This document shows, piece after piece, positions 3,115-62,304 of a stretch of DNA of 64,000 nt. Both the position numbers and the translations under genes were made by a program. Below the pieces are notes generated by a model, which was given only the letters and a program-made list of their open reading frames with translations, was not told the origin of the DNA and searched no databases. How positions within the stretch are numbered: position 1 is the first letter of the stretch; each line of letters starts with the position of its first letter. The stretch is from positions 416,839-480,838 of the IMG/VR virus record IMGVR_UViG_3300028558_000791; one strand, 5' to 3'.

Positions 3115-3183
3115 GGTGGGATAAGGTGAGAGGTCTTTGGCTCCCATTCACTGTCTGATCTTACCCAAGATCGAGGTGATTCG

Positions 3184-3558
3184 ATGAACAAGAGCCAGGT
3201 TTCCGCCATCCTCGCAAGCAATCCTCGTGCCGTCACCAAGGCCGTTGTCCTACTCTTCGGCTTGCAGACCCACCAGGAGCGTGGGACACATCGCACCATC
3301 GACGACAACGGGGTCGGGTTCAGCGCGGCCGACGCTGACTTCGGCACCTACTGCGCGATGTGGGTGCTCAACATCCACAAGACCACTCCGCCTCACATCG
3401 TGGCCGACCGACTGGCCCACTACTTGCAGGGCGACAACCACCGCAGGTATCGCACCCTGTCGGGGAAGTTCCTCCAACGTGCGCTGGAGATGACACCGCG
3501 CTACTGGCGGCAGCTCTCACATGCTGCGAAGGTGAAGGCGGAGTCGGTTCCCTTCTGA
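3184..3558 (+). CDS. Conserved phage hypothetical protein
   Basis: GAGG RBS, 11-mer upstream; QTxxE...NGVGFSxxDA pattern familiar from phage early proteins. Confidence 0.7.
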   Translation: MNKSQVSAILASNPRAVTKAVVLLFGLQTHQERGTHRTIDDNGVGFSAADADFGTYCAMWVLNIHKTTPPHIVADRLAHYLQGDNHRRYRTLSGKFLQRALEMTPRYWRQLSHAAKVKAESVPF

Positions 3559-3574
3559 CATCAGGCGACTCGTC

Positions 3575-3610
3575 GGGAGAGGTAGGACATCCTACCTCTC
3601 CTTTCTTTTG
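3575..3610 (+). terminator. Intrinsic terminator
   Basis: GGAGAGGTAGG-acat-CCTACCTCTCC followed by TTTCTTTTG, after the 3558 stop. Confidence 0.7.
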
Positions 3611-3623
3611 TCTACAGTGTGGT

Positions 3624-3659
3624 TGGTATAGTCGTTGCAATATGCAAGGTGCCATGCCA
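3624..3659. promoter_or_regulatory. Sigma54-like palindrome, copy 3 (reverse half N11)
   Basis: TGGTATAGTCGTTGCA-ATA-TGCAAGGTGCCATGCCA. Confidence 0.5.
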
Positions 3660-3760
3660 GGTAAGTGCGAGCCAGGTAAAAGGGCGCGGCTCCCATTCAC
3701 TGACTACCCAGGCCGGAAGGTGCGACGCCAACCCAAACCGAACGAAAGAGAGATACCGCC

Positions 3761-4456
3761 ATGTCCGACCTTTCCCTCTCGCCCGACAACATCATCGCTC
3801 TCCTCCTCTCGCAGCACACGTCGCACCAGGTCGCACACGAGGCGACCAAGGTGACCACCACCATCATCCGCAACGCGGAGCCCAGCAAGAAGCAGGCCAA
3901 GCAGGCCGAGGCCCGCAAGGGCGAGGTGAAGGCTCCCATTCACAACGGCCCCAAGGTGTTCGGTGTGGCGATGCCCGACCGCAACACGCTGGATGCCAAA
4001 GGCTTCCTGATGGCTTGCCGCGATGCCGGCAAGCGCTCCTTCCAGACGGTCAACGAAGTGACCGGCGAAGTTACCTCGGTCGTCAAGCGTGACGAGCGAG
4101 AGGTGCGCAACGATCTCATCAAGGCGATTCACGCCTACTGCGGTTACGACAACGGCCGTGACTTCGGCTCGCAAGACACGGCGGCCAGGGCGAAGGCCAG
4201 TCGCGAGCTGAGCGGCAAGCCCATCGTCCTCGGTCCCTCGCGAGAGGAGCAGAAGGCGGCCGAGCGGTCAATGACCGGCTACGTTCACGGCATGCCGAAC
4301 TACATGGCGTCCAAGGTGGCCGAGCTGACGGCACGTGAGACGGCCACGGCAGAGGAGCTGATCGATGCCCGCAAGGAGGGCAACGAGGTGGAGGTGGCAC
4401 GCTTGACCGCACTGCTCTCCAACGTGCGAGGCGAGCTGAGCCGCCTCGGTCTCTGA
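3761..4456 (+). CDS. Hypothetical protein
   Basis: 231-aa ORF, strong C/G-ending codon bias, 11-mer upstream and one internal copy (KAPIH). Confidence 0.8.
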   Translation: MSDLSLSPDNIIALLLSQHTSHQVAHEATKVTTTIIRNAEPSKKQAKQAEARKGEVKAPIHNGPKVFGVAMPDRNTLDAKGFLMACRDAGKRSFQTVNEVTGEVTSVVKRDEREVRNDLIKAIHAYCGYDNGRDFGSQDTAARAKASRELSGKPIVLGPSREEQKAAERSMTGYVHGMPNYMASKVAELTARETATAEELIDARKEGNEVEVARLTALLSNVRGELSRLGL

Positions 4457-4529
4457 CACACACACGGACTTACATCAGAGAGGGCTGCACCTGGCGGGGT
4501 GTGGCCCTTTCGTTTTTCCGCAATCGGCT

Positions 4530-4564
4530 TGGCACGGACGTTGCAGAGTGCAAACGATGTGCCA
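4530..4564. promoter_or_regulatory. Double opposed sigma54-like site, copy 4 (closest to consensus)
   Basis: TGGCACGGACGTTGCA on + and TGGCACATCGTTTGCA on -. Confidence 0.7.
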
Positions 4565-4810
4565 CGGAGATCCGCCTCTCCACACAAGAAAGAGAGTGCC
4601 GCTCCCATTCACTGACAGTCGAGAGCGAGAAGCGCAGCAACGAACGGACGGCAGCAAGCGCAAGCAAGCGCAGCGCATGTAGGATGCGTGACTAGGAGAC
4701 CCCGAAGACGTGCCCGAATGTGAGGGCATGTAAGTCACCCTACCCGATGACCATAGCGCAAGTCGTCCAGCCGAGCTGCTCCCATTCACCGCTCGCTGAA
4801 AGGAGTGAGC

Positions 4811-5050
4811 ATGAGACGCCGCAACGAAGTCGATACCAACGCACTTCCGGATCTGATGCCACGTGTGGCACGCATGTTGGAAGTGACGGGCGTGAGCATC
4901 GAAGACGTGGTGGCAGAATTGCGCACTACGGATCTGACGGAGTACAACATCTTCCTCACCATCAAAGGTGCGGCCATGTGTTACCCTCACGTCAAGCAAG
5001 CGCTCGCTGATGCCTGCCCCGACACTCTGCCCTCTCCCATTCACGACTGA
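4811..5050 (+). CDS. Hypothetical protein
   Basis: AGGAG RBS, 11-mer at 4779; ends PSPIHD, encoded by the next 11-mer. Confidence 0.65.
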   Translation: MRRRNEVDTNALPDLMPRVARMLEVTGVSIEDVVAELRTTDLTEYNIFLTIKGAAMCYPHVKQALADACPDTLPSPIHD

Positions 5051-5106
5051 CTCGAAACGATAAACGCCGCAAGGCAATCACCGCAACGAACGAAAGAGAG
5101 ACCATC

Positions 5107-5295
5107 ATGGAAAACGTCAAGTTCACCCGCAACGGCGACAAGCTCACCATCGAAGTCGACCTCGCCTACCGTGGGCAGGTGTCCGCCACCGGCAAGACCC
5201 TTCGGGTCGCCAGCACCGAAGGCAACGTCCCCTGCGACGGTTCCCCCGAGATCAAGATCGGTCTCAACATCTTCGCCCCTGTTCCCAAGAAGTAA
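5107..5295 (+). CDS. Small beta-rich hypothetical protein, paralogue of 11486..11662
   Basis: KLTIEVDL...TGKTxRVASTEGN; about 40/58 residues identical to the second copy by hand alignment. Confidence 0.85.
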   Translation: MENVKFTRNGDKLTIEVDLAYRGQVSATGKTLRVASTEGNVPCDGSPEIKIGLNIFAPVPKK

Positions 5296-5366
5296 TTCGC
5301 CTACATCGGCGAGCCCCCTGCAATCCCGATACCAACAGGTACGCAAGGGACAGGGGGCTGACTCTT

Positions 5367-5453
5367 CGCCAGTGCTACACGAAAAACGGGGCGGGACGCC
5401 TCGGCCTTCCAAGGTGGTGTAGCGTAAGGGTTCGATTCCCTGACTGGCGACCC
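5367..5453 (+). ncRNA. tRNA-like element with non-canonical core (degenerate Gly-UCC-like loop)
   Basis: CGCCAGT/ACTGGCG acceptor, AGGG-TTCGATT-CCCT T-arm, CTTCCAA loop in a mismatched stem, extra GCTACAC/GTGTAGC helix. Confidence 0.5.
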
Positions 5454-5500
5454 TGGCTCCCATTCATGAGCCAGTAGATTCCAACATCGGAGGTTCCAAC

Positions 5501-5788
5501 ATGAAGTCACTCGACATGGCAGACAAGTATCCCCCGGCCGAAGACTTCGATGATGAGGACACCACCGTCCGCATGCATGTGCCTACCTTCCTCCCCAAGG
5601 TCATCGTCGAGGATGAGGGTGAGGACGAGTACGACCTCTGGGGAGCTAGGGATACCATCCCCTGCCCACCTCCCTACCCTCATCCCCACATGAAGCGAGA
5701 AGTCAATTGGGGTGCAGTCGGCATCCTTGCCTTCACCATCGTCTTCTGGTGGACCGTCGGCTACATGCTCTACTGCTGGATCTACTGA
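5501..5788 (+). CDS. Acidic protein with C-terminal transmembrane helix
   Basis: GGAGG RBS; hydrophobic C-terminus. Confidence 0.7.
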   Translation: MKSLDMADKYPPAEDFDDEDTTVRMHVPTFLPKVIVEDEGEDEYDLWGARDTIPCPPPYPHPHMKREVNWGAVGILAFTIVFWWTVGYMLYCWIY

Positions 5789-5872
5789 CCAGCTCCCTGG
5801 CCCGACCTCCCATTCACTGGGAGGCGGGCTTTAGGCATTATCAGGGGGCATGGGCAATGTCCCCATCTGTGT

Positions 5873-6014
5873 AGGAGGAATGCCGAGTAGTCGCTCAAGC
5901 CTGGAACATGGCGACACGAGCGTAAAAAGACTAGCAGGTGTCACACACCGTTTGGGCTAACTAGCTCCCGAGTGTGTGAAACTGTAATCTAGTGTAGCTA
6001 CTCGTAACTCTCCT
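5873..6014 (+). ncRNA. Candidate multi-stem structured RNA
   Basis: Nested complementary segments AGGAG/CTCCT, CGAGTAG/CTACTCG, CGCTC/GAGCG, ACTAG/CTAGT, TCACACAC/GTGTGTGA in a non-coding gap. Confidence 0.5.
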
Positions 6015-6054
6015 TGTGTTCTCTCCCATTCACAACTCACCCTGAGGTGCAGCC

Positions 6055-6303
6055 ATGGCGTACGGTCTTTGGAATGTGAGCGGTAAGGTCATCATCCCCG
6101 GCACGCGCAAGAGCGCCAGCTTCGGTCCCGTTCGCATCGGCGATAAGGATCGTCAGACCGCCAGCAAGTGGCTGGCCTGCATGCTGAACGACAAGTTCAA
6201 GCGTGACCTGCGCGGAGGTGCGAAGTTCTCCGACCACTTCGCCCTCATGAACCTGAAGTGGGAAGATGTCGGCAAAGCTGCGCCGGCTCCCGCACAGACG
6301 TGA
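6055..6303 (+). CDS. Hypothetical protein
   Basis: GAGG RBS, 11-mer at 6023, phage-like codon bias. Confidence 0.7.
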   Translation: MAYGLWNVSGKVIIPGTRKSASFGPVRIGDKDRQTASKWLACMLNDKFKRDLRGGAKFSDHFALMNLKWEDVGKAAPAPAQT

Positions 6304-6350
6304 GGTGGATGGCTCCAGGGTAATACCTGGGGCCGTTCTTCAAAAGGCGG

Positions 6351-6385
6351 TGGCACGCCCGTTGCACTCTGCATCCCGCATGCCA
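6351..6385. promoter_or_regulatory. Double opposed sigma54-like site, copy 5
   Basis: TGGCACGCCCGTTGCA-CTC-TGCATCCCGCATGCCA. Confidence 0.65.
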
Positions 6386-6430
6386 TCGCCGCTTCGGCTC
6401 CCATTCACAACCCCCTGGAGAGCAACGAAC

Positions 6431-6577
6431 ATGGCAACGTCATTCGTCATCAAGCTCCCCAAGCAGAAAGCGCGTAACCCCCTGGGTCACATGCAAGAGC
6501 GGAAGCAGATCATGCGTGACCGTCGCAACCGGCGTCCCAAGGATGCCCGCAAGCAACGCGAACCCTTCGAGTCCTGA
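6431..6577 (+). CDS. Small Arg/Lys-rich peptide
   Basis: GGAG RBS, 11-mer at 6398; MATSFVIKLPKQKARNP... Confidence 0.6.
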   Translation: MATSFVIKLPKQKARNPLGHMQERKQIMRDRRNRRPKDARKQREPFES

Positions 6578-6600
6578 ACCCTCCCATTCACCGCCAACAA

Positions 6601-6795
6601 GTGGAGATGCACATGAGCAAGCAAACGTTCCGAGTGGTCGAGATGACGATTGTCCCTGGCCAGGAGCCGGCGACCAAACTCGTGCAGGGCAACCTCCCCA
6701 AGGGCAAGGCTCAGTCTCTCCAGGAGAAGCTGGAAGAGAAGCTCGGCGACTTCGACCCGCAGAAGGTGGTCTCCTACCTGGTCCAACCAGCATGA
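6601..6795 (+). CDS. Hypothetical protein
   Basis: 11-mer at 6581, GGAG RBS before the internal ATGs. Confidence 0.65.
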   Translation: MEMHMSKQTFRVVEMTIVPGQEPATKLVQGNLPKGKAQSLQEKLEEKLGDFDPQKVVSYLVQPA

Positions 6796-7378
6796 CTGTA
6801 GCACCGAACCTTGCCAGCATCCAAAGCGTAGGATGCTGGTACGAGGACCAGGAACGTACGCAACCCATGCGGTACCAGGTGTGTGTACGCCAGTTCCGTA
6901 GAGGTGAGTGGGAAGTCATGATGGGTAGCATCGTAACCTACCTGTCACCCGAAGACTACTGCGACATGCATCAGCTACTACTGGTGGAGATGTATCGTGG
7001 CACGCGCCATGCACTCTCACACGAACGCACGGAGTTGATCTAACGATCCTCCTACAAGTCAGCAGAGCTGGGGAGGATGTCATGTAACATCACACGGTTG
7101 ATGACCGTTGTTTACTTGCGCCGACAACCAGAGAGATAGTAGCGACTCCCATTCATCGACACCCTCAAACCAAAGGAATCGAGATGCTGGGTTTAGTCGG
7201 GCGGGAGTGAGTCCCGCCCATCCTTGGCTACAGTGCTGCCCACGCGACTCTATGGGCTCTAGCTGCAAGGTAATTAGGTAACGTAGTCTGCAACGTTCTC
7301 ACATAAGCGTTCCGGGTTTAGGAACCAGTGAGTCATATCCTTCTAGGATGTGGGGATACGTCAGCTACCTACCGTTGG

Positions 7379-7406
7379 ATTGGGGCCTGGCGAGGCCCCA
7401 ATTTTA
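7379..7406 (+). terminator. Intrinsic terminator-like hairpin
   Basis: ATTGGGGCCT-ggcg-AGGCCCCAAT followed by TTT. Confidence 0.55.
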
Positions 7407-7494
7407 ATACGAACGCACCTACCCCGCACCACAGCACAGCACACACGGCGCCATCAGGGCGCTTTTTGTTAGCGTACATGTAGGGAAAGGTAGT

Positions 7495-7529
7495 TGGCAT
7501 GGGCAGTGCATATTGCAAACGATATGCCA
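7495..7529. promoter_or_regulatory. Double opposed sigma54-like site, copy 6
   Basis: TGGCATGGGCAGTGCA-TAT-TGCAAACGATATGCCA. Confidence 0.6.
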
Positions 7530-7579
7530 GCAGGTTCCGCCCGCACAATCAAGCGACCGAAGGTGTGGGATAAGGTGGT

Positions 7580-7614
7580 TGGCATGGCCGTTGCATATTG
7601 CGAAGGCTATGCCG
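7580..7614. promoter_or_regulatory. Double opposed sigma54-like site, copy 7
   Basis: TGGCATGGCCGTTGCA-TAT-TGCGAAGGCTATGCCG. Confidence 0.6.
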
Positions 7615-7794
7615 GGCTGGGCGCGAGGGTGCAAGGGAAGCGGCTCCCATTCACGGATAGCCGGCGACCGAAAGCGCCGCAACCAACCACGAACAAGCAA
7701 ACGAGTCACACACTCACAATGACTCACAAGGTACGGAACGGCAGCTCCCATTCACGGCGCATCGAACGCCAAGGTCACGACGGAGGAAACGAAC

Positions 7795-7995
7795 ATGGGT
7801 AAAGTCATCGTCATCATTCTGGCCACGTGTGCGGCACTGGGTATCCTGGTGCACTTCCTGGGCCATGCGACTATGGGGTCAACGGCCGTCACTGTCCCCA
7901 ACACGGAACACACTCCCGCATTCGGACTTACATGGTTCGTGATCGGTGGTCTGTTCATCGGCGGTCTCTTCTACAAGCTCGTCAAGGGCAAGTAG
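7795..7995 (+). CDS. Small two-helix membrane protein
   Basis: GGAGG RBS; two hydrophobic segments. Confidence 0.7.
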   Translation: MGKVIVIILATCAALGILVHFLGHATMGSTAVTVPNTEHTPAFGLTWFVIGGLFIGGLFYKLVKGK

Positions 7996-8202
7996 GAGGG
8001 CCTGTAGGAATCTGGGTATACCCCCTACCCCTAAAAAAGTTTTACCTGTTTTCCCAAAAACGGTAATCGGGGTTCGGTATACGCATACCATTCCTGTAGG
8101 TTTTCATGGGTGGGGTGTCAAGCCCCCAGCAAGTCTAGCTAGGAGCCTACCTTGGTTGCCAACTAGCTAGCTCCCATTCACTGCACGTCGAGAGGTGAAA
8201 GC

Positions 8203-8457
8203 ATGGCACACTCAATCGGTCTCGGCGATATCGTCTCTCTCCAGTGGAGTGATGGGTACGACAACGGTACTGTCTGTCAGGTCCACAAGGACGGAACGGT
8301 AGACGTCTTTCGTCCCTACGTCCACAATGCTGACTTCTCATGTGCAGGTAGTCACGAGGGTTCACTGTCGGTCATCTGCTACATTGGAGTCGAGACTAGC
8401 AAGGGTATCAATCCCGAGCGTCTCAAGGTACTCCGCAAGGGCGGCACGATTCGATAG
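8203..8457 (+). CDS. Hypothetical protein
   Basis: GAGGTG RBS, 11-mer at 8171. Confidence 0.7.
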   Translation: MAHSIGLGDIVSLQWSDGYDNGTVCQVHKDGTVDVFRPYVHNADFSCAGSHEGSLSVICYIGVETSKGINPERLKVLRKGGTIR

Positions 8458-8493
8458 CCTCCCATTCACGGCGGCAGGAAAGCGACAATAGCA

Positions 8494-8695
8494 ACGGCGG
8501 GCTAGACTCTGGGTACATGGCATACTTGGTCGCTACCCAAGTAGGTCCCAACTGAGACAGTATCTTGTAGCGAGGGAATGTCTTGGGGGCCACAAGCTCC
8601 CCACATAGGGGTTCGACTCCCCACTACTATCCAAGTGGTAGGAGACCAGGTTGGCTGGGTGTGTGTTGGCATGAACCTAGAGTCTAGCCCATCGT
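8494..8695 (+). ncRNA. Long terminal-stem RNA enclosing a compact tRNA-like domain (8565-8633)
   Basis: GGGCTAGACTCT/AGAGTCTAGCCC end stem; internal GGGG-TTCGACT-CCCC T-arm, G-rich anticodon-like arm, ...TCCA. Confidence 0.55.
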
Positions 8696-8731
8696 CGGGC
8701 TCCCATTCACGGCCCATCAGCGGAGGATGAC

Positions 8732-8962
8732 ATGAGCAACAACAACGCAACGGCGCAGCAAGTCACGGCAGGCATCAGAGCAGCGGCGGCCATTGGTGAG
8801 GTAATTCGAGACTTGGGCTCTGTCCCCTCGGGGCACCTGTATGCCCGACTCATGGGACGTATGAGCCTGGACACCTACAACAGTCTCATCGGACTACTCA
8901 AGCAAGCCAATCTGGTGGAGGAGTCTAACCACCTTCTCACCTGGGTCGGCCCCAAAGAGTAA
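8732..8962 (+). CDS. Small winged-helix-like protein
   Basis: Helix-turn-helix pattern followed by LVEESNHLLTW wing; GGAGG RBS. Confidence 0.55.
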   Translation: MSNNNATAQQVTAGIRAAAAIGEVIRDLGSVPSGHLYARLMGRMSLDTYNSLIGLLKQANLVEESNHLLTWVGPKE

Positions 8963-8971
8963 CCATCTCAC

Positions 8972-9229
8972 ATGAAAAAACATCTCATCATCCTACTCAC
9001 GCTTACCCTGATGGTGGCGGCAGGTGTTCACTGCGGGGAGCGTGAGTTGGAGTCAGAGTGTGACTCTTTCGGTCCCACATCCACACACTGTCAGTGGAAG
9101 ATCGAAAACAGGTATGCGGGACTCTGCTGTCCTGGCACACATCCCTACTGCGGTAGAGAGGGTACTACCTGTCCAGTTGGTAGTTGCTGCGAGTCGGCAC
9201 CTCTGTACACACATCTACACACCAACTAG
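8972..9229 (+). CDS. Secreted Cys-rich protein
   Basis: Signal-like N-terminus; CC and CG motifs. Confidence 0.6.
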   Translation: MKKHLIILLTLTLMVAAGVHCGERELESECDSFGPTSTHCQWKIENRYAGLCCPGTHPYCGREGTTCPVGSCCESAPLYTHLHTN

Positions 9230-9261
9230 CTCCCATTCACGGCAGACCGGAGAGCAAGGTC

Positions 9262-9483
9262 ATGAAGACCGCAATCGAGGTTCCCAAGGCCATTGTCATC
9301 CAGGTGGCTACGTGGTACGATGGTGAGCTGGTACTGGAGACGGTGTGTCGAGACTACGACCACTACACCACACTACCCAACGTGGTAGTCTACGAAGGGG
9401 TGGAGTGTGGTAAGACGGGTTGGAGTAGTGATAACCACTATGCCTGCTACAAGTCAGGAGCCAGTATCGCACATGGGCGCTGA
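9262..9483 (+). CDS. Hypothetical protein
   Basis: 11-mer at 9230, GGAG/AAGG RBS. Confidence 0.6.
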   Translation: MKTAIEVPKAIVIQVATWYDGELVLETVCRDYDHYTTLPNVVVYEGVECGKTGWSSDNHYACYKSGASIAHGR

Positions 9484-9622
9484 TTCCAAGAGCAAGCGTG
9501 AGCGTTGGGGCGAGGTAGTTAGCAAGACGGGGAAGTGTCCCTTCTGCCCACCTCACAACGGGGAGAACGCCAAGAGGCGTACTCGTACGGACAAGTACAA
9601 GAGCAAGCGCAAGGGCCGCTGA
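9473..9622 (+). CDS. Small basic CxxC peptide
   Basis: KCPFCPPH; overlaps the upstream stop. Confidence 0.5.
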   Translation: MGADSKSKRERWGEVVSKTGKCPFCPPHNGENAKRRTRTDKYKSKRKGR

Positions 9623-9670
9623 GGGCTCCCATTCACGGTCGAACGAAACCCAAGGTCGGAGGCAACGAAC

Positions 9671-10300
9671 ATGGCTGACACGAAAGAGCGCAAGATGACC
9701 CCCAAGGGATTCTTGCACAAGACCACGACCAAGGCCGCAAACTCGGCCATCGCGTTTCTGACTCAGTACCGGGAGTATCTGACCACGGGTGAGGTGAAGG
9801 AAGCCTGCGCCCCCATCATCGCCAAGGTGGACTCTGGTGAGCTTCTGCCCACCCCTGCCCTCAAGGAGATTCAGTATGCGGTGATGACGCACATCATCGT
9901 CTCTGACTCCACCAAGGCCGACAAGTCAGCGGTGGAGCCCAAGGTCAAGGGGCAGACACGCAAGGCATGGCGGTCAACCATCTACGATGCGGCTGGTGTA
10001 GTCCAGACTCGCACCAACGGCAAGGGTGAGGAGGAGGATCTCATTCAGGGGTTCGATCTCTCACAACGTGCCAACGAGTGGGCAGACCGGCGCTTGTTCG
10101 AGGGGACGCATGGCTGGTATGCCATCGTGGAGCACACTGTCATCCCCAACATCTCCAGTCGAATCGAGCGAGGGGATTCCATGGCACGAATCCTGAAGCA
10201 GCCCAAGGGGCCGGCCATTCAGCAGAAGGGCAAGAGCACCAAGACTCTCGGGTTCGGGGTCAAGGCCAAACAGACACGAGTGACTTTCTCGGGTAGCTGA
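9671..10300 (+). CDS. Hypothetical protein
   Basis: 209-aa ORF, GGAGG RBS, 11-mer at 9626. Confidence 0.8.
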   Translation: MADTKERKMTPKGFLHKTTTKAANSAIAFLTQYREYLTTGEVKEACAPIIAKVDSGELLPTPALKEIQYAVMTHIIVSDSTKADKSAVEPKVKGQTRKAWRSTIYDAAGVVQTRTNGKGEEEDLIQGFDLSQRANEWADRRLFEGTHGWYAIVEHTVIPNISSRIERGDSMARILKQPKGPAIQQKGKSTKTLGFGVKAKQTRVTFSGS

Positions 10301-10369
10301 GACAAGGGAGGGGCAGGTAGGTTGTCGTGGGCCTGACCTGCCCCTCCCATTCACGGAAGGACGAGTGAC

Positions 10370-10663
10370 ATGGCTATGACGTTGACCGAAGCAATGAAGG
10401 CACTGGGTACGACAACCGAGTCAGTCACGGCCAAGCTGAGGGAGAAAGGTATCAAAGGGTACCGTCGTCTGGCACACTCGTGTCCCCTCGCCAAGTATCT
10501 CAAGCAAGAGTGTCAGGTCCAGGATGTGACTGTCGGCACCACGGCTAACATCTACCAGGGTGAGAGTCAGACACCGGATGAGAGTTACATGCTCCCCGAT
10601 GGTGTCAAGGTGTGGGTGCAGAACTTCGATGATGGGATGTATCCGGAGTTCTGGTTGGACTGA
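10370..10663 (+). CDS. Hypothetical protein
   Basis: 11-mer at 10344; CPLAxYL pattern. Confidence 0.7.
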   Translation: MAMTLTEAMKALGTTTESVTAKLREKGIKGYRRLAHSCPLAKYLKQECQVQDVTVGTTANIYQGESQTPDESYMLPDGVKVWVQNFDDGMYPEFWLD

Positions 10664-10895
10664 AGGTCCCTTGCTGGAGTAGGTGTAGACCCCCCACCCC
10701 TAAAAAAGTTTTCGGTCAATTCTCAGAATCGGTAATCGGGCCTTGGAATCCACATAGTTTTTTCCAGGGTTTTTTGGCTCCCATTCACTGAGCGAATCTA
10801 GCGGCGGATCGGAAAGGGTGTATGTCGCCATGAGAACCTGGGAAGAGTACGAGGAAGAGACCAGCAAGTTTCCCTGGTGGTACACGGGGGACTAG

Positions 10896-11156
10896 GTGGA
10901 CACCGACGAATTCGAGATAACTGCAACACATCCACACATGGAGGCACGTGTGTGGACTAGGAGTCGCTACGAAGTAGCCAAGGCAATTGCTGATGGGGCG
11001 GTTACCAAGCTAGGGTATAGCAAGGTAGTAGTCATCAACACCTTCGGTGGCCATAGGAGCGATACCTTGTACGAGGTAGTGTCGGGCTCCCATTCACGGG
11101 ACTACGTGGAGGAGGAACGCAATGCAAGTCACCAAGCGTTCAATGCTCAGCGGTAA
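10896..11156 (+). CDS. Hypothetical protein
   Basis: GTG start; 11-mer near the 3' end. Confidence 0.5.
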   Translation: MDTDEFEITATHPHMEARVWTRSRYEVAKAIADGAVTKLGYSKVVVINTFGGHRSDTLYEVVSGSHSRDYVEEERNASHQAFNAQR

Positions 11157-11319
11157 AGAGCACACTCTGGAGATTGACATCACCTGGGAACAGATGCATC
11201 GTTGGAAGATGGGTGGAGAGCTACTACAGAACGTGTGTCCCCACTTGTCGGTGGATGACCGAGAGTTTCTCATCAGTGGTTCCACCAAGGAAGAGTGGGA
11301 TAACTTCTTCAAGCGATAA
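11122..11319 (+). CDS. Conserved small phage protein
   Basis: SMLSGKEHTLEI...LLQNVCPHLSVDDREFLISG pattern common in phages; GGAGG RBS. Confidence 0.75.
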   Translation: MQVTKRSMLSGKEHTLEIDITWEQMHRWKMGGELLQNVCPHLSVDDREFLISGSTKEEWDNFFKR

Positions 11320-11485
11320 GGGGCCTGCGAGTCTGGGTAGAACCAGTAAGGATCCCTTCACGTAAACCTGTAATAGTAACCTAAACCCTTGGCCCGTACC
11401 TATCGAAAGATGGGGCGGGCATAAGGCATTGAAACAACTTGGGAGATGCAATGCTCCCATTCACCAACGCAACGGAGCAATGCAC

Positions 11486-11662
11486 ATGGAAAACGTCAAG
11501 ATGTCGGTCAACGGAACGAAGCTCACCATCGAGGTGGATCTCGCCCATCGTGGTGCGAAGTCCAGCACGGGGAAGACGGTGCGAGTCGCTTCCACCGAGG
11601 GGAACATCGAGTGTCCCGAGAATCCGGCCATCAAGGTTGGCCTGAATATCTTTACGAAGTAA
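11486..11662 (+). CDS. Paralogue of 5107..5295
   Basis: GGAG RBS; shared KLTIEVDL/TGKT/VASTEGN. Confidence 0.85.
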   Translation: MENVKMSVNGTKLTIEVDLAHRGAKSSTGKTVRVASTEGNIECPENPAIKVGLNIFTK

Positions 11663-11723
11663 TTCGTAAGGGTAGGATCAACTCCCATTCACCAAACAAC
11701 CAAACGAGAGACACAACATCAAC

Positions 11724-11921
11724 ATGTGCGGCAACAAGCGGGATGCAGTCGAGAACGTCCAGATCAACCTCAACTACATGAAGGAGGACGTCAGCAGCGC
11801 ACTCTCCTACGCCAGTGATGTGGGCGACCCGGAGCTGACCAAGCAGCTCACGGAGCTGAAGGACAAGACCCAGGGCGTCAAGGACTACATCAAGTCCAAG
11901 GCCGACCCCAAGAAGGGCTGA
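11724..11921 (+). CDS. Small helical hypothetical protein
   Basis: 11-mer at 11682; strong codon bias. Confidence 0.7.
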   Translation: MCGNKRDAVENVQINLNYMKEDVSSALSYASDVGDPELTKQLTELKDKTQGVKDYIKSKADPKKG

Positions 11922-11986
11922 AGCACAAGACGGGCATTGGACCGATAGCTATCTAACCATACCTCCCTCTGGCGGTAGCTATCCGA

Positions 11987-12116
11987 GGTCCGAAACAAGG
12001 TAAGTGAAAGTATATAGGTAGGGTCCCTGTCACACTAGCGGTGGTGATGTCAGCCGTCCCGACCATGCGAGTAACTACCTTGTCCCCAGCGTAGGGCGCT
12101 GGGCTGATGAGCCAAC
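11987..12116 (+). ncRNA. Hammerhead ribozyme (type II-like permutation) with large insertion in stem III
   Basis: GAAA 11992-95; stem III ACAAGGTA/TACCTTGT; GUC at 12082-84; stem I CCCAGCG/CGCTGGG; CTGATGAG 12104-11; stem II is non-standard. Confidence 0.7.
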
Positions 12117-12284
12117 CATGAAGTATCTCCTCCCATTCATAGTAGTAGTGATGATAGGTTGCAGGACGGTACTACCCAAGGAAGACTACAGCATAGTCAT
12201 TACCTCTCATGTCTGCGATGTAGACGGAGGTGCGTGTCACAAGGAGACGAAGGTTCTCCCATTCACGGCGGAGGGTTCAAAGTG

Positions 12285-12533
12285 ATGGCAATCGGTACAA
12301 CGCTGACGGTTCAAGGAATCACTTGGGCATCCATGAAGTACAATGGCAAGCTAGCCCTGGGATACAGGAAGCATGCCATCGCTTGGGATTGTGGTAGTGG
12401 CAAGTATCACATCTTGGAAGAGGGTCGCAGTATCTTCTCTGACTCAAGTGTGACTGCCTGCTTGGAGAACGCGGCAGCACTGGTGTGGGACTACTACGCC
12501 AGCAAGATCATTCCCTCTTGGGAAGTGGCATAG
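12285..12533 (+). CDS. Hypothetical protein
   Basis: GGAGG RBS, 11-mer at 12256. Confidence 0.65.
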   Translation: MAIGTTLTVQGITWASMKYNGKLALGYRKHAIAWDCGSGKYHILEEGRSIFSDSSVTACLENAAALVWDYYASKIIPSWEVA

Positions 12534-12616
12534 GGACGAAGGCGCTCCCATTCACGGGACGCCGGCACGAACGAACAACCGAGCAATCACGCTCAACTGA
12601 AAAGGACGAATCAATC

Positions 12617-13069
12617 ATGGCTTGGGACAAGACCCCCTCTCAGAAGGAAGCCGTCAAGGCGTTTCTCGTGACCACGGATGGCAAGACGGATCTGGAGGCT
12701 TCGGTGGAGAAGTACCGCCAGGTGTGTCTCGGATACATCGCTGGTCAGACGGCAGAGCAGGATCTCGTTGCATCCTGCATGACGGAGCTGTTCAACTTCC
12801 GCAAGGGAGCCACGCTCAACCTGGACTACATCAAGAGCCAGACGGTGGCTCTGATGGTCAAGCGTGAGCCCAGCCTCAGCGACCCCACGCTGTTCGCCAT
12901 GCTGAGTGGTCGGGTGGAGGACTACCTCCATGCCAACTGCAACCAGCCGGCGCAGGAAGCCAAGGGCAAGCGTCCTGCCAAGGAAGCTGTCACTGGCCAG
13001 ACCTACTCGGTCCGTCGTGGTCTGGGTGGCGGGTTCTACCGCGACACCGACCAGGCGCCTACCAAGTGA
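12617..13069 (+). CDS. Winged-helix-like protein, paralogue of 29579..29995 and 19708..20187
   Basis: LVTTDG..D..AS, TELF, LSGRVEDY, RRGLGGG. Confidence 0.8.
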   Translation: MAWDKTPSQKEAVKAFLVTTDGKTDLEASVEKYRQVCLGYIAGQTAEQDLVASCMTELFNFRKGATLNLDYIKSQTVALMVKREPSLSDPTLFAMLSGRVEDYLHANCNQPAQEAKGKRPAKEAVTGQTYSVRRGLGGGFYRDTDQAPTK

Positions 13070-14350: not shown

Positions 14351-14353
14351 GAT

Positions 14354-15911: not shown

Positions 15912-15916
15912 AACAT

Positions 15917-58795: not shown

Positions 58796-59017
58796 GCGGC
58801 CGGCTCCCATTCACGGGCCGTCCGCACCGAAGGGTGCGCTCCATGCTCAGAATCAGAACCAAGATAGGAGAGGGTAGAGTATTCACTCTCTACTTCCAAG
58901 GCGAGTGGGTAACCATTATGTCTGGTATGGGCAAGACTCAATCAACTGAAGCTGACACTCTGGTGGGTGCCGGTATCAACCATCTAGCATACTGCCAAAA
59001 ACTGAAGGAGATCACCA

Positions 59018-59647: not shown

Positions 59648-59940
59648 GCAACGAAAAAGTCGAAACCCTGGACAACCAAATCTTCACTGCCGATGCGTGG
59701 CGCCCTGACCAAGGACTCAATGCTCAGTACAAGGATGTGACTCTCAAGATTCAGGTGGGTGAGTTCCCGGTTGGTAGCAAGTTCCCCTTCGCTATCCTAC
59801 TTGGAGACGCATCCATGCTCGTGCTCGTGGATGAGGCCCATAAGGAACATGGGTTCCGTTTGGCCCTGAACGTTGGTGAGTCTGTGGATCTGTCCGAGCT
59901 TCAATGCCAGGACGAGAACTGCACCCATCATCACGGATAA
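59644..59940 (+). CDS. Hypothetical protein
   Basis: L.VQVG.F..G...P pattern; ATGA coupling. Confidence 0.7.
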   Translation: MSNEKVETLDNQIFTADAWRPDQGLNAQYKDVTLKIQVGEFPVGSKFPFAILLGDASMLVLVDEAHKEHGFRLALNVGESVDLSELQCQDENCTHHHG

Positions 59941-59944
59941 GACT

Positions 59945-60480
59945 TAGACTTACCAAACCAAAAGGACGCTGATGGTGAGGTAGGGCTGACAAGTACAGTC
60001 AGCTTTCGGTTCAACGACCTGCGCAACAGGTAGTTGGTTCGAGTCAAGGGGTTGCTAGCTGCACCTGTCCATCAATGGATTAAATTAGCTAGGGTATCAA
60101 CTTCCATAAGTTGAAGCGTAGGCGGTCAAGTCTTATACATAGCCCCGGTTCTTGTTCAATATTGCCGGTCTCAATATTGGTCTTAGGTCAACATCTCAAA
60201 CACCGAATGAAATTCGAGATCAGTGTTGCTGACTTCTGAAGTAGTAGAAGGTTAGGGGCACTCCTGCCCATACCCGTGAGCGTCAGTTTTCGCTTCCGTT
60301 TTGAGTACGAAAACATAAGCACATGCTTAGTAACCAACTTGCAAGGGTTACGGTGTAGGTGCCTATAAAACGGAGGATCAATCTTATAGGAGAGTGTACT
60401 GTGGCAACTTGAGCGCCACCATAACGAATGGAGATAGTTATGACACCCGCTGTTTGACCGTGGCGTTCAACGGTCTAAGC
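59945..60480 (+). ncRNA. Candidate large structured ncRNA upstream of tRNA-Glu
   Basis: About 530 nt without a convincing ORF, with at least 10 hairpins. Confidence 0.45.
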
Positions 60481-60481
60481 C

Positions 60482-60556
60482 GGCCCCATCTTCTAGCGGC
60501 TAGGATGCGAGACCTTCACTCTCGTCACACGGGTTCGAGTCCCGTTGGGGTCACCA
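60482..60556 (+). tRNA. tRNA-Glu (anticodon UUC) with encoded CCA
   Basis: GGCCCCA/TGGGGTC acceptor, CGAGA-CCTTCAC-TCTCG, ACGGG-TTCGAGT-CCCGT, ACCA; C at position 33. Confidence 0.85.
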
Positions 60557-60568
60557 GGAGAATACACA

Positions 60569-60838
60569 ATGGATTCAGTACCGCTCAAAAAGATTCGAGA
60601 AAAAGCCGAGGCATACGATAAGAAACTCCTGGCCACTGACCCTCGATTCCGAAGGGCAGTTACCATCCAACATGAAGATGGATCAGTTCTATATTTCAAT
60701 CACGCTTTCTTAGCAAGGATTGATGATTGGGTTGTGTGTTTCACTGAGCACCATGGCGTACACGTTTATCACTCTGGGGATTTATATTCCTATGAGGAAC
60801 ACACTCGAAGGCACGAGGCTATTGAGGAACTACCATGA
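60569..60838 (+). CDS. Hypothetical protein
   Basis: AGGAG RBS; FTEHHG. Confidence 0.7.
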   Translation: MDSVPLKKIREKAEAYDKKLLATDPRFRRAVTIQHEDGSVLYFNHAFLARIDDWVVCFTEHHGVHVYHSGDLYSYEEHTRRHEAIEELP

Positions 60839-61113
60839 TTGATGTGGATGCGACATTCAAAACGATTCGCAACATCTACCAGACTGTCACTGGTAAATCG
60901 GACAGTGATGTGACTCTCTCTTTCGAGACAAGTCTTGGTGTTACGAAGCCTTGGAAGGCTAAGATTGAGGCCAGGGAAGTGAAGCACGAGCAGTATGACG
61001 GGGCCTTGACTGGCCTTCTCGCCATGCTCAAGAAAGAATTGGCAGACAAAGTAAAGTCTGCCGAGAACGAAGCCAAACGATTGCAGCAGGCTTTCAACCA
61101 GCTAGGTAATTGA
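60835..61113 (+). CDS. Coiled-coil hypothetical protein
   Basis: ATGA coupling. Confidence 0.65.
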   Translation: MIDVDATFKTIRNIYQTVTGKSDSDVTLSFETSLGVTKPWKAKIEAREVKHEQYDGALTGLLAMLKKELADKVKSAENEAKRLQQAFNQLGN

Positions 61114-61431
61114 ACATGATTCGAGTACGATATTCAAACTTAGAGGTGGTAGAGTACAGTGATGTTGAGCTGGCCAACTTCATGGCCATCAATACCTTGT
61201 TCGCTACTCACGGATACATCGAACCTATCGAAGCGGTAGAGGTGATGGGTCATACTTCTGGTGGAGTATCAGTGGAGCGAGTGCTTTCAATCAAGCTTGG
61301 ATTCATTCAGTCCGGCTGGGATGCCTGAACGCGAATTTAATGGGGCCGCACTTGCCCGCCAGGTAGGGCCGCCAGGGAGCCGGGGCAACCATACGCCCAC
61401 ATACACACACACGAATAGTAGGTAATCAATC

Positions 61432-62304
61432 ATGACTCTTGGTGGATACAGCGATCACGCTACAGTAAGCGCCATTCGATATGAACAACCCAAGCTCTCT
61501 GCTGAGAACCCTATTGAGTTTAATCCTAAAGGACTCTGGACTCCTACCATTGACTCTGATAACATTGCTTATCAGTCATTGTTCAAGCCATTCAATCTGA
61601 ATCAATACTTGTACCCACGCCCACCTATTGATATGGGGCTGACGGCTCCCATTCACGGTGGCTGCCCGAACGTGTTACGGATGCCGCTCAAGTTTCCTGG
61701 GACAATCTACAAGATTCCCCGTCAATTGGAAGCGTTGGAACCATTGATTCAGAGAGTTGCGGAGTACGAGAAGTTCATTAACAAGGACCACGACTCCTGT
61801 TTTAGCCATATTACCTGTGATTTCTCCAACGTTTCGTCTGGTGAGTATCATCGCTTCCCAGGTTTCCATGGTGATGGCATTCAAGGAACTAAGCTTTCAC
61901 CGAAGGTGAATGTGGAACACTCTTACATTCTCACGTGGGATCCTCCTACGGAGTTTTGTTTGCAGCCGTTCTTTCTCAAGCACTTGGATGAGGCTAAGCA
62001 CAACTACTTCTTGGAGTTTGATCGTCAAGCCAAGGAGGTCAATCTGTACGGAACGATTCCATATCACCTGTATCTGATTGACCCTTACATGGTGCATCGC
62101 ACTCCTAAAATCAAACAGAGAACTAGCCGATTGTTCCTGCGTATCACTTACGCATTCACGGAGCTACAGCATCCCAAGAACACAATCAACCCACTCTTTG
62201 ATGGACAGGAATATCATAAGCGGATAGACATCCGTGAGAACCTGTGTGCCAATGAGTTTGAAGTACCGTGGCATCTGTACGGACTAACCAGGAATGACCA
62301 ATGA
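61432..62304 (+). CDS. 2OG-Fe(II) dioxygenase-like protein
   Basis: GFHGDG (HxD), MVHRTP (distal His), RLFLRI (Arg). Confidence 0.6.
   Translation: MTLGGYSDHATVSAIRYEQPKLSAENPIEFNPKGLWTPTIDSDNIAYQSLFKPFNLNQYLYPRPPIDMGLTAPIHGGCPNVLRMPLKFPGTIYKIPRQLEALEPLIQRVAEYEKFINKDHDSCFSHITCDFSNVSSGEYHRFPGFHGDGIQGTKLSPKVNVEHSYILTWDPPTEFCLQPFFLKHLDEAKHNYFLEFDRQAKEVNLYGTIPYHLYLIDPYMVHRTPKIKQRTSRLFLRITYAFTELQHPKNTINPLFDGQEYHKRIDIRENLCANEFEVPWHLYGLTRNDQ

What the first reader, a model, noticed from the sequence alone, without database searches (positions are those of the whole stretch)
3141..61656. Strictly polar 11-mer CTCCCATTCAC repeated about 45 times with a steep positional gradient
Seen: all copies I found are on the + strand (none noticed as GTGAATGGGAG). 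There are 36 exact copies in 3.1-25.1 kb, 5 in 27-35 kb, 4 beyond 35 kb and none in the minus-strand block. Most lie about 20-75 nt before a start codon, often with GG/AG before and GG after. Chance expectation for an 11-mer in 64 kb is about 0.015 per strand. Established analogues: promoters of phage-encoded RNA polymerases, the asymmetric stoperators of mycobacteriophage L5, and PeSL repeats that shuffle genes in T4-like phages. Inference: an early-promoter or protein-loading code marking first-expressed DNA, possibly also a recombination junction that makes gene cassettes.
Basis: partly seen in the sequence, partly recalled or inferred. Interest (0 to 1): 0.85.

Follow-up and report, generated by a model that had tools for sequence, protein, structure and literature searches.

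The report
Phage-specific promoter motif, huge soil phage
A strictly one-stranded 11-base word sits just ahead of about fifty small genes at one end of a roughly 0.5-Mb uncultivated soil phage genome and is most likely the promoter of a phage-specific transcription machinery, a known kind of signal whose polymerase here is still unidentified.

Summary
In detail: CTCCCATTCAC occurs 45 times, all on the + strand, against about 0.04 expected. The core CTCCCATTC occurs 53 times on + and never on -. The 36/5/4 gradient is as described.

The window is the last 64 kb of a 498-kb rhizosphere phage contig. The motif block starts at a divergence point where GC jumps from about 0.40 to 0.60.

Copies lie between a stop codon and the next start. 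The commonest gap to the ATG is exactly 21 nt, and a purine lies 2 nt after the motif in 111 of 113 sites. The leader is unstructured and T-poor, and no second conserved element is present.

The word is invariant in at least a dozen related metagenomic phages whose flanks have diverged to background. A more distant relative carries a variant, GACCCATTCAA, in the same layout.

Best reading: the core promoter of a phage-specific RNA polymerase or sigma-like factor (confidence about 0.6). The enzyme was not found, and no transcript 5' ends are available.

Gene-order breakpoints between relatives fall at the motif, which gives the recombination idea partial but confounded support.

A second conserved element resembling sigma54 promoters lies upstream of a subset of copies, so an RNA-level rival stays open.

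The parts
3141..25039 (+). Dense block of the motif: 36 exact CTCCCATTCAC copies plus 7 variants that keep the 9-base core.
   Evidence: Exact copies are listed. Variants are at 5457, 7146, 12130, 15345, 16722 and 18011 (ending CAT) and 19775 (ending CGC). Density is about 2 per kb, roughly one per gene.
27870..34945 (+). Sparser stretch: 5 exact copies (27870, 29263, 30037, 33079, 34935) and one variant ending CAG (33316).
   Evidence: The copy at 30037 precedes the 715-aa TerD-like gene. The copy at 34935 lies 21 nt before the ATG at 34967.
39657..39667 (+). Distal exact copy.
   Evidence: An upstream ORF stops 3 nt before it. Relative A has a copy at the matching place (L077 4607).
47101..47111 (+). 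Distal exact copy near the 5' end of the ORF at 47049-47537.
   Evidence: Relative A has a copy at the matching place (L077 10731).
58804..58814 (+). Distal exact copy, 8 nt after an upstream stop codon.
61646..61656 (+). Distal exact copy inside the 290-aa ORF at 61432-62304 (intragenic).
2973..3114 (.). Sigma54-like elements (TGGCAY-N5-TTGCW) in the divergent intergenic region: a + copy at 2973 and a palindromic pair at 3080-3114. They lie 61 nt upstream of the first motif copy.
   Evidence: The window holds 9 such elements against 0.13 expected. They are conserved in relatives A, B and L199.
4530..4564 (.). Sigma54-like palindrome lying between the terminator at 4478-4511 and the motif copy at 4602.
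6351..6366 (+). Sigma54-like element 47 nt upstream of the motif copy at 6398.
7514..7595 (.). Sigma54-like elements (- copy at 7514-7529, + copy at 7580-7595) lying between the terminator at 7447-7463 and the motif copy at 7644.
27808..27823 (+). Sigma54-like element 62 nt upstream of the motif copy at 27870.
3575..3602 (+). Strong intrinsic terminator after the first gene. A motif copy follows at 3690.
   Evidence: 12-pair stem followed by a T run.
4478..4511 (+). Strong intrinsic terminator after the second gene.
   Evidence: 15-pair stem followed by a T run.
7447..7463 (+). Intrinsic terminator.
10738..10777 (+). Terminator-like hairpin with a T run that abuts the motif copy at 10778. No sigma54-like element lies between them.
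   Evidence: 11-pair stem, -14.3 kcal/mol, z-score -1.9.
3184..3558 (+). First gene of the block (124 aa), which has its own terminator.
   Evidence: It has 27 metagenomic homologues. The AlphaFold model has pLDDT 84.5 and is all-helical, with no match among solved PDB structures. Its only family hit is a PHROG of unknown function.
3761..4456 (+). Second gene (231 aa). It has its own terminator and contains a conserved internal motif copy at 3933.
   Evidence: Its family has 297 clusters at 50% identity. The model has pLDDT 86.7 with no Pfam, PDB-sequence or PDB-fold match. The internal copy is kept in relatives.
315..2689 (-). Minus-strand block of three peptidase genes (M10-like, trypsin-like, C39) that bounds the motif region on its left. 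It carries no motif copy.
   Evidence: The same junction is present in relatives.
2700..4000 (.). Step in G+C content from about 0.42 to about 0.60, coinciding with the first motif copy.
   Evidence: The same step is seen in relatives L066, L067, L311 and L314.

Best explanation
The 11-mer is the core promoter of a phage-specific transcription system. That system would be either a phage-encoded RNA polymerase or a phage factor that retargets the host polymerase. It drives about fifty mostly small genes of unknown function, singly or in short runs, all in one direction away from a divergence point near window position 3000.

Proposed working (inferred): the enzyme reads the double-stranded word CTCCCATTCA(C/T), which is G+C-rich at its 5' half and A+T-richer at its 3' half. 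It melts the 3' half and starts at the purine 2 nt past the word. This gives leaders of about 20 nt that hold only a Shine-Dalgarno sequence.

The density gradient reflects gene size and operon length. Nearly every small gene in the first 22 kb has its own copy, while the larger genes further on share one.

Shown: the statistics, strand polarity, placement, spacing, conservation across relatives and the clade-specific variant.

Inferred: that the word acts on DNA as a promoter, the start site, the 'early' timing and the nature of the enzyme.
For: 1. Polarity and excess. 45 exact and 53 core copies on +, none on -.

2. Placement. An upstream ORF's stop codon ends 0-8 nt before the motif at 18 sites and within 30 nt at 26 sites. 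The commonest distance from motif end to the ATG is exactly 21 nt in three phages (12, 9 and 2 sites).

3. Start-site clue. The base 2 nt after the motif is a purine in 111 of 113 distinct sites from three phages and is never T. Some Shine-Dalgarno sequences begin 4 nt after the motif (12256), and some starts lie only 7-15 nt after it (21621, 21789, 10344). A start site would therefore have to lie within about 3 nt of the motif.

4. It is the only conserved element. Information content is flat upstream and there is no -35/-10 pair. Sigma70-like sites are depleted in 3-23 kb, 4 found against 10.3 +/- 3.3 expected. There is no conserved hairpin. The leader is less structured than controls (p = 0.003) and T-poor, 13% against 21%.

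5. Terminator then motif then gene. This order is seen at 3575-3602 then 3690, 4478-4511 then 4602, 7447-7463 then 7644, and at a hairpin with T run that abuts 10778.

6. Selection on the word itself. It is identical in relatives A and B (about 70-77% nucleotide identity) and in at least 10 further metagenomic loci, always on one strand. 34 of 54 relatives' sites have no flank similarity above background. In one search the gene is about 85% identical and the 21-nt leader is scrambled but keeps its length, while the motif is intact.

7. Clade-specific variant. A distant relative (L316) has (C/T)GACCCATTCAA 24 times on + and 0 times on -, with 15-23 nt to the ATG. It shares the core CCCATTCA and differs in the flanks, as in families of phage RNA-polymerase promoters.

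8. Replacement of a host-type promoter. Xanthomonas phage XacN1 has consensus sigma70 promoters upstream of the orthologue of the gene that carries the 11-mer here.
Against: - No RNA polymerase, sigma factor or other transcription protein was found in the window. The first two genes have confident models with no known fold.
- Published descriptions of the cultured distant relatives report no phage RNA polymerase (PMC8504454 by its own text; PMC5852040 has no mention).
- There are no 5'-end data. The only RNA-library contigs, from a relative, run through motif copies.
- The conserved part, 11-13 bp, is shorter than classical T7-type promoters.
- Near-total invariance with no weak variants would also fit a sequence-specific binding or cleavage site.
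- Sigma54-like elements 41-72 nt upstream of a subset of copies could be the real promoters there.
Confidence: 0.6

Rival explanations
1. RNA-level element. The true promoters are the sigma54-like elements and possibly others. The 11-mer acts in the transcript, about 20 nt before each start codon. It would be either the recognition site of a sequence-specific endoribonuclease that cuts long transcripts into single-gene mRNAs, or a site for a translation or stability factor.
For: - Strand polarity, intergenic placement and a fixed 21-nt distance to the ATG are equally expected for an RNA signal.
- The order terminator, sigma54-like element, 11-mer, gene recurs in the first 8 kb.
- The 5' CTCC(C) can pair with the GGAG Shine-Dalgarno sequence downstream (seen directly).
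- Leaders in L316 often lack a clear Shine-Dalgarno sequence.
- RNA-library contigs contain the motif internally.
Against: - Beyond 8 kb there is only one sigma54-like element (27808), yet about 30 more motif copies follow.
- The copy at 10778 abuts a terminator-like hairpin with nothing else before the next gene.
- A copy precedes the very first gene of the block, where no cistron separation is needed.
- Tandem copies occur with no ORF between them (4602/4779, 7644/7745, 8459/8700).
- There is no conserved RNA structure.
- Contigs spanning the motif argue against efficient cleavage, though weakly.
Confidence: 0.2
2. Stoperator-like site. A phage DNA-binding protein binds the asymmetric word wherever it occurs and blocks or tunes transcription that passes in one direction, for example to shut off this gene block later in infection. 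This is how the L5 repressor gp71 acts at its 13-bp sites.
For: - The word is short, asymmetric and invariant.
- It lies in short intergenic gaps.
- It has one orientation relative to transcription.
- There are many copies.
- The invariance resembles that of a protein operator.
Against: - This model needs independent promoters, and those are not seen for most of the block.
- The fixed purine 2 nt downstream and the 21-nt mode to the ATG have no role in a roadblock.
- No repressor-like or integrase gene was found in the window.
- Lysogeny is not indicated for this roughly 0.5-Mb phage.
Confidence: 0.1
3. The word exists mainly as a recombination signal or microhomology that shuffles gene cassettes, with no role in expression.
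For: - Homology between relatives ends within a few bases of the motif on one side only: 11 sites downstream only, 5 upstream only, 4 on both sides (alignments).
- The order of motif-bounded units differs between phages.
Against: - The result is confounded. Nearly every gene boundary carries the word, and intergenic DNA diverges fastest.
- A pure recombination signal would not need a 21-nt spacing to the ATG, a downstream purine or strict co-orientation with the genes.
- 11 bp is short for homologous exchange.
Confidence: 0.05
4. Polar chromosome-handling signal of the Chi or KOPS type, read by a translocase or nuclease that moves from the nearby contig end.
For: Strict polarity and proximity to a contig end. 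The window ends 281 nt before the end of the 498-kb contig.
Against: Copies sit at fixed distances from start codons and almost only between genes. Density is highest far from the contig end. Chi and KOPS sites are scattered through coding DNA.
Confidence: 0.02

Closest known systems
Promoters of phage single-subunit RNA polymerases (T7, T3, SP6, K11, Syn5) and the 9-nt yeast mitochondrial promoter read by a T7-like enzyme (my own knowledge)
   Same: - One contiguous, near-invariant, strand-specific word that abuts the start site.
- G or purine starts.
- Many copies before genes.
- Related phages carry related but distinct words (CTCCCATTCAC against GACCCATTCAA).
   Different: - Only 11-13 conserved bp instead of about 17-23.
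- Far denser, about 2 per kb.
- No such polymerase gene was seen in the window.
- The start site is not mapped.
Single-element promoters read by small phage sigma-like factors with host polymerase (T4 late TATAAATA with gp55/gp33; phiEco32 gp36) (my own knowledge)
   Same: - One short, highly conserved element with no -35 partner.
- This would fit a lineage whose cultured relatives encode no polymerase (PMC8504454).
- Jumbo phages of the T4-like group carry sigma factors (PMC7824862).
   Different: - The sequence is unrelated and G+C-rich.
- In those systems the start lies about 6-7 nt past the element. Here Shine-Dalgarno positions and the fixed purine put it within about 3 nt.
- No sigma-like protein was found.
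PeSL (promoter-early stem-loop) cassettes of T4-type phages (my own knowledge of Arbiol et al. 2010)
   Same: Repeated regulatory words flank small early genes, and gene cassettes differ between relatives at those words.
   Different: PeSLs are about 50-70-bp units made of a sigma70 early promoter plus a stem-loop. Here there is an 11-bp word, no sigma70 consensus and no stem-loop.
Stoperators of mycobacteriophage L5 (my own knowledge)
   Same: A short asymmetric word, many copies, short intergenic gaps, and orientation tied to the direction of transcription.
   Different: L5 sites are repressor-binding sites in a temperate phage that has separate promoters. Here there is no repressor, no lysogeny genes and no other promoters for most genes.
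Host-takeover or pre-early modules at phage genome ends (SPO1 terminal redundancy, T5 first-step-transfer DNA) (my own knowledge)
   Same: A block of many small genes of unknown function at one genome end, each with its own strong promoter.
   Different: Those modules use host sigma-A or sigma70 promoters. Here the word is not host-like. It is also unknown whether this end is a true terminus or enters the cell first.

Membership tests
T7-type single-subunit RNA polymerase promoters | A contiguous conserved block of about 17-23 bp spanning -17 to +6. | tested here: not met
   Only 11 invariant bases plus weak G at -1 and purine at +2. Information content is flat elsewhere.
T7-type single-subunit RNA polymerase promoters | Transcription starts at a fixed purine at the 3' edge of the block. 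| tested here: inconclusive
   A purine 2 nt after the word in 111 of 113 sites, together with the Shine-Dalgarno positions, fits this. No 5'-end data exist.
T7-type single-subunit RNA polymerase promoters | The genome encodes a single-subunit RNA polymerase. | not testable with these tools
   No such gene is in the 64-kb window. The other 434 kb of the contig could not be fetched.
Single-element promoters of phage sigma-like factors (T4 gp55 type) | A short -10-like element ending about 6-7 nt before the start, with no -35 element. | tested here: inconclusive
   The absence of a -35 element is met. The inferred start lies within about 3 nt of the word, which does not fit, but that start is only inferred.
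Single-element promoters of phage sigma-like factors (T4 gp55 type) | A phage-encoded sigma-like factor. | tested here: inconclusive
   None was found by Pfam or PHROGs in the window. The first two proteins have no sigma-like fold. The rest of the genome was not seen.
L5-type stoperators | Many copies of an asymmetric 13-bp word in intergenic gaps, oriented with transcription. | tested here: met
   although the word here is 11 bp.
L5-type stoperators | A cognate repressor and separate promoters that drive the blocked transcription. | tested here: not met
   No repressor-like gene is in the window. Sigma70-like sites are depleted, and sigma54-like elements occur only in the first 8 kb plus 27808.
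T4-type PeSL cassettes | A repeat unit made of a sigma70 early promoter plus a stem-loop. | tested here: not met
   There is no sigma70 consensus and no conserved hairpin.
T4-type PeSL cassettes | Gene gain, loss or reordering between relatives is bounded by the repeat. | tested here: inconclusive
   One-sided homology occurs at 16 of the 20 informative sites, and units are shuffled. This is confounded with gene boundaries.
Chi / KOPS-type polar motifs | Copies are scattered through coding DNA irrespective of gene starts. | tested here: not met
   Copies are intergenic, with a 21-nt mode to the ATG.
Sigma54 (-24/-12) promoters (applies to the second element, not the 11-mer) | TGGCAC-N5-TTGCW with exact spacing. 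| tested here: met
   9 in the window against 0.13 expected. Several copies match TGGCACG-N4-TTGCA perfectly, and the element is conserved in relatives.
Sigma54 (-24/-12) promoters (applies to the second element, not the 11-mer) | An enhancer-binding AAA+ activator and a host that has sigma54. | not testable with these tools
   The host is unknown. The window's AAA protein (43691-45199) matches PF00004, not the sigma54-activator family. The frequent palindromic pairing of the element would also suit a dimeric DNA-binding protein.

The most novel reading that the evidence does not exclude
A clade of roughly 0.5-Mb soil phages uses a transcription machinery of a kind not yet recognised. The cultured distant relatives have no detectable polymerase or sigma factor. 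The machinery reads an unusually short 11-nt promoter placed before almost every small gene. The core CCCATTCA is shared across the clade, and the flanking specificity bases change from clade to clade. In the same genomes the first genes are launched from sigma54-type elements, which would make these the first phages known to exploit the host's enhancer-dependent sigma54 polymerase for immediate-early expression. The high-G+C, highly mosaic block would be a dedicated accessory-gene arena whose cassettes are exchanged at the promoter word.
Probability: 0.2. Interest if true: 0.8.

Novelty: new member of a known kind. Interest (0 to 1): 0.55.

Why it matters
If the promoter reading holds, the word gives a ready-made map of about fifty transcription units in an uncultivated huge phage. 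It also gives a handle for finding the unknown polymerase or specificity factor: look for the protein that co-varies with the CTCCCATTCAC and GACCCATTCAA clades.

It marks a compositionally distinct, rapidly shuffled block of small genes, which are likely host-takeover or counter-defence functions and could be mined.

The sigma54-like elements and the conserved G+C step are unexpected side features that deserve their own tests.

If the promoter reading fails, the alternative is an 11-nt RNA recognition site before every gene. That would be less ordinary than a promoter.

Tried and rejected
- **Nucleotide search against cultured phages.** No match. Only distant protein-level kin were found, XacN1 and Xoo-sp13 at 38-41%.
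- **Literature string search for the word.** It returned only unrelated primers. The XacN1, RsoM2USA, Matilda and jumbo-phage overview papers do not describe such a motif.
- **Looking for the same or an analogous polar word in distant relatives.**
  - It is absent from XacN1 and from loci L124-L131.
  - The recurring TTCCTTCTA there turned out to be a separate structured element, not a promoter analogue.
- **RNA evidence.**
  - No RNA run holds this DNA.
  - A soil metatranscriptome holds a relative's contigs, but they give no ends at the motif.
- **Candidate specificity factors.**
  - Pfam and PHROGs scans of about 60 window proteins found nothing related to transcription.
  - The first two proteins were modelled with good confidence but matched no solved fold or sequence.
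  - The 715-aa and 603-aa proteins look TerD-like and FGE-sulfatase-like respectively, not polymerase-like.
- **Conserved hairpin, as in N4 early promoters or PeSL.** None was found.
- **Collection scans with two motif copies 220-250 nt apart.**
  - IMG/VR gave only the three known contigs plus one unrelated ribosome-binding-site repeat, L134.
  - The genome collection gave 56 hits. My own estimate of chance is about 34. They are unrelated tandem repeats.
- **Related-loci searches.** A search with the p231 alignment failed for lack of a conserved stretch, and a search with the L316 protein found nothing.
- **Walking the contig to find a polymerase.** Not attempted beyond 10 kb, because the look-up caps allow only about 10 kb per step.

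Full report

Yes. CTCCCATTCAC occurs 45 times in the window, all on the + strand. Dinucleotide-preserving shuffles give a mean of 0.04 and never more than 1. The positional split is as reported: 36 copies up to 25039, 5 between 27870 and 34945, and 4 beyond.

The 9-base core CTCCCATTC occurs 53 times on + and never on -. The eight extra + copies differ only at the last two bases: six end in CAT, one in CGC and one in CAG. Two-mismatch hits are at chance level on both strands.

Around the word only three positions carry information. G is preferred at -1 and at +1, and the second base after the word is G or A in 43 of 45 copies. Upstream the profile is flat, with no second box.

**2. Where the window comes from**

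The window is the last 64 kb of a 498,445-bp contig from a rhizosphere metagenome. The contig ends 281 nt after the window. An independent ENA assembly gives 498,443 bp. IMG/VR holds a trimmed 480,838-bp version.

The only cultured kin are distant. A 715-aa TerD-like protein (30061-32208) is 38-41% identical to proteins of the Xanthomonas jumbo phages XacN1 and Xoo-sp13.

The motif block begins at a divergence point. To its left lie three minus-strand peptidase genes (315-2689). Beyond them is a low-G+C region with no motif copy on either strand.

G+C steps from about 0.40 to about 0.60 exactly where the first copy appears, then declines slowly to about 0.47. The same junction and the same step occur in every relative that covers it.

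**3. Anatomy of a copy**

- **Upstream side.** The stop codon of an upstream + strand ORF ends 0-8 nt before the word at 18 sites and within 30 nt at 26 sites. A few copies overlap the last codons of the upstream gene (5034, 15871, 25029). A few are truly internal (3933, 61646).
- **Downstream side.** The commonest distance from the end of the word to an ATG preceded by a Shine-Dalgarno (ribosome-binding) sequence is exactly 21 nt. This is seen at 12 sites here, 9 in relative A and 2 in relative B. The rest are spread from 7 to about 76 nt, with some longer.
- **Leader.** It is T-poor (13% against 21%), purine-rich and less structured than control windows (p = 0.003). No hairpin is conserved on either side.
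- **Host-type promoters.** Sigma70-like sites are fewer than expected in 3-23 kb, 4 found against 10.3 +/- 3.3.
- **Terminators.** Three strong intrinsic terminators, plus one terminator-like hairpin, are each followed by a copy and then a gene. The one at 10738-10777 abuts the copy at 10778 with nothing else between them.

**4. Relatives**

Two other IMG/VR jumbo contigs share the region at about 70-77% nucleotide identity and carry the identical word, always on one strand. These are relative A (209,766 bp) and relative B (340,341 bp). At least ten metagenomic loci, and further contigs found through the first gene's protein, do the same. For example, L314 has 28 copies in 10.5 kb and L199 has 26 in 11 kb.

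Of 54 relatives' sites, 34 have no flank similarity to any window site above background. The word is therefore conserved by selection on itself, not by recent duplication.

In one clean case the downstream gene is about 85% identical, the 21-nt leader is scrambled but keeps its length, and the word is intact.

Pooling 113 distinct sites from three phages, the base 2 nt after the word is a purine in 111 and never T.

A more distant relative, L316, has a homologue of the second gene at about 34% identity. It carries a different word, (C/T)GACCCATTCAA, 24 times on + and 0 times on -, with 15-23 nt to the ATG. The core CCCATTCA is shared and the flanks are clade-specific.

Still more distant kin have neither word near the orthologous TerD-like gene. 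This group has TerD-like proteins 33-52% identical to the window's and includes XacN1. XacN1 has consensus sigma70 promoters there.

**5. What it most likely is**

A short, contiguous, invariant, strand-locked word with these properties is the signature of a promoter for a phage-specific transcription enzyme:
- it is the only conserved thing between a terminator or stop codon and the next gene;
- a fixed purine and minimal leaders follow just after it;
- a sister clade carries a variant of it.

The position of some Shine-Dalgarno sequences is informative. One begins 4 nt after the word at 12256. Some starts lie only 7-15 nt after the word. A start site would therefore have to lie within about 3 nt of the word. 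This is the geometry of T7-type and mitochondrial promoters rather than of a sigma -10 box (my own knowledge of those systems).

I put this reading at about 0.6.

What is missing is the enzyme. About 60 window proteins show nothing transcription-related. The first two genes of the block each have their own terminator and were the best candidates for a specificity factor. Both give confident models with no known fold. The second belongs to a large family of 297 clusters that has no annotation and no cultured member.

No transcript 5' ends are available. A soil metatranscriptome contains a relative's contigs at uneven depth (21-283). These run through motif copies, so they show only that the word is present in some RNA-library molecules.

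**6. A second element, and the main rival**

Aligning the divergent intergenic region of three phages revealed conserved TGGCAY-N5-TTGCW elements. The window has nine of them against 0.13 expected. Several match the textbook sigma54 consensus TGGCACG-N4-TTGCA perfectly. They are often arranged as a roughly 35-bp palindrome.

The + copies lie 41-72 nt upstream of a subset of 11-mers: 3141, 4602, 6398, 7644 and 27870 here, and the same in relatives. They typically sit just after a terminator.

They may be host sigma54-type immediate-early promoters, or operators of a dimeric regulator. They also allow a rival model in which they are the promoters and the 11-mer acts in the RNA, as a processing site or a translation or stability site.

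Four points count against that rival:
- the sigma54-like elements stop at about 8 kb, apart from one at 27808, while about 30 more 11-mers follow;
- the copy at 10778 follows a terminator-like hairpin directly;
- a copy precedes the first gene of the block;
- tandem copies occur with no ORF between them.

I give the RNA-level model about 0.2, a stoperator-like roadblock about 0.1, a pure recombination signal about 0.05 and a Chi/KOPS-type signal about 0.02.

**7. The recombination idea**

Gene order and content differ between the phages in motif-bounded units. Among the 20 relatives' sites with any detectable flank homology, 16 have it on one side only.

Base-level alignments show homology ending within a few bases of the word. 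In one case the upstream gene is conserved and the downstream gene replaced. In others the reverse holds.

It is confounded, because the word marks nearly every gene boundary. The PeSL family features, a sigma70 promoter plus a stem-loop, are absent.

**8. Verdict**

The promoter interpretation is the best supported but unproven. 'Early' is inference. The recombination role is plausible but confounded.

In kind this is a phage-specific promoter family, so a new member of a known kind. The following features raise its interest:
- the very high density of copies;
- the short length and absolute invariance of the word;
- the unidentified enzyme;
- a clade-specific variant;
- the coupled sigma54-like elements;
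- the conserved G+C step.

Noticed in passing
window 2973-7595 and 27808-27823; relatives L067, L066, L199, L204, L198, L234, L314: Sigma54-like elements TGGCAY-N5-TTGCW, often as roughly 35-bp palindromes. There are 9 in the window against 0.13 expected. They lie 41-72 nt upstream of a subset of 11-mers, usually just after a terminator. They could be sigma54 promoters in a phage or operators of a dimeric regulator.
   Followed up: partly
window about 2700-4000; L120, L066, L067, L311, L314: A sharp, conserved G+C step from about 0.35-0.45 to about 0.60-0.66 exactly at the start of the motif block, followed by a slow decline to about 0.47 over 60 kb. The cause is unknown. Possibilities are host-like composition, avoidance of silencing proteins that bind A+T-rich DNA, or biased gene conversion in a recombining block.
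   Followed up: partly
window about 32350-32770 (+); L119 19534-19915 (XacN1); L124-L131 next to the TerD-like gene: A tandem array of 2-5 copies of a 65-90-nt element with conserved GGCYAT, TTCCTTCTA and GCTTTCC blocks. The closing helix covaries, with 13-15 double changes per pair. It always lies beside the TerD-like gene, from this phage out to XacN1. It has no Rfam match and looks like an undescribed small structured RNA family.
   Followed up: partly
L120 19949-20699 (about 9.3-10 kb upstream of the window start, on the window's + strand): The phage contig encodes a peptide-chain release factor (PCRF/RF-1 domains).
   Followed up: no
window 315-2689 (-): Three adjacent peptidase genes (M10-like metallopeptidase, trypsin-like, C39 cysteine peptidase). 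They are conserved in the relatives as the left boundary of the motif block.
   Followed up: no
window 3933-3943 inside the gene at 3761-4456: An intragenic copy of the 11-mer (encoding A-P-I-H) is kept in all close relatives. An in-frame ATG follows 27 nt later. This may be an internal promoter for a shorter protein form.
   Followed up: partly
window 3761-4456 and 3184-3558: Two conserved first genes give confident predicted structures (pLDDT 86.7 and 84.5) that match no solved fold or Pfam family. The 231-aa protein has 297 clusters of relatives in metagenomes and none in cultured phages.
   Followed up: yes
L119 19480-19990 (XacN1 upstream of ORF396): XacN1 has consensus sigma70 promoters (TTGACA-N17-TATAAT) in the long intergenic region before its TerD-like gene, the orthologue of the window gene that carries the 11-mer.
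   Followed up: no
run X5 laid on window 6000-10400: A soil metatranscriptome contains contigs of an 80-90% similar relative at very uneven depth (21-283). This suggests the gene block is transcribed in nature. DNA carry-over cannot be excluded.
   Followed up: partly
window leaders after 4602, 5034, 7644, 12545, 29263: The long leaders share T-free, C/A/G-rich stretches of low complexity (GAAAGCGCCGCAAC-like runs) that are partly conserved in relatives.
   Followed up: no
L120 13480-18258 (window coordinates about -7200 to -2500, on the window's + strand): A tightly packed array of about 13 genes of 105-175 aa. Some are weakly paralogous (22-47% identity). The array is also present in relatives L066, L311 and L314.
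   Followed up: partly
window 60482-60556 (+): A single tRNA-Glu (anticodon TTC) gene.
   Followed up: no
L138, L142, L171, L182, L189, L228, L294, L307 (metagenome and genome collections): The 10-mer CTCCCATTCA also occurs inside unrelated short-period tandem repeats (13-117 bp) in various organisms. These are not related to the phage motif.
   Followed up: yes
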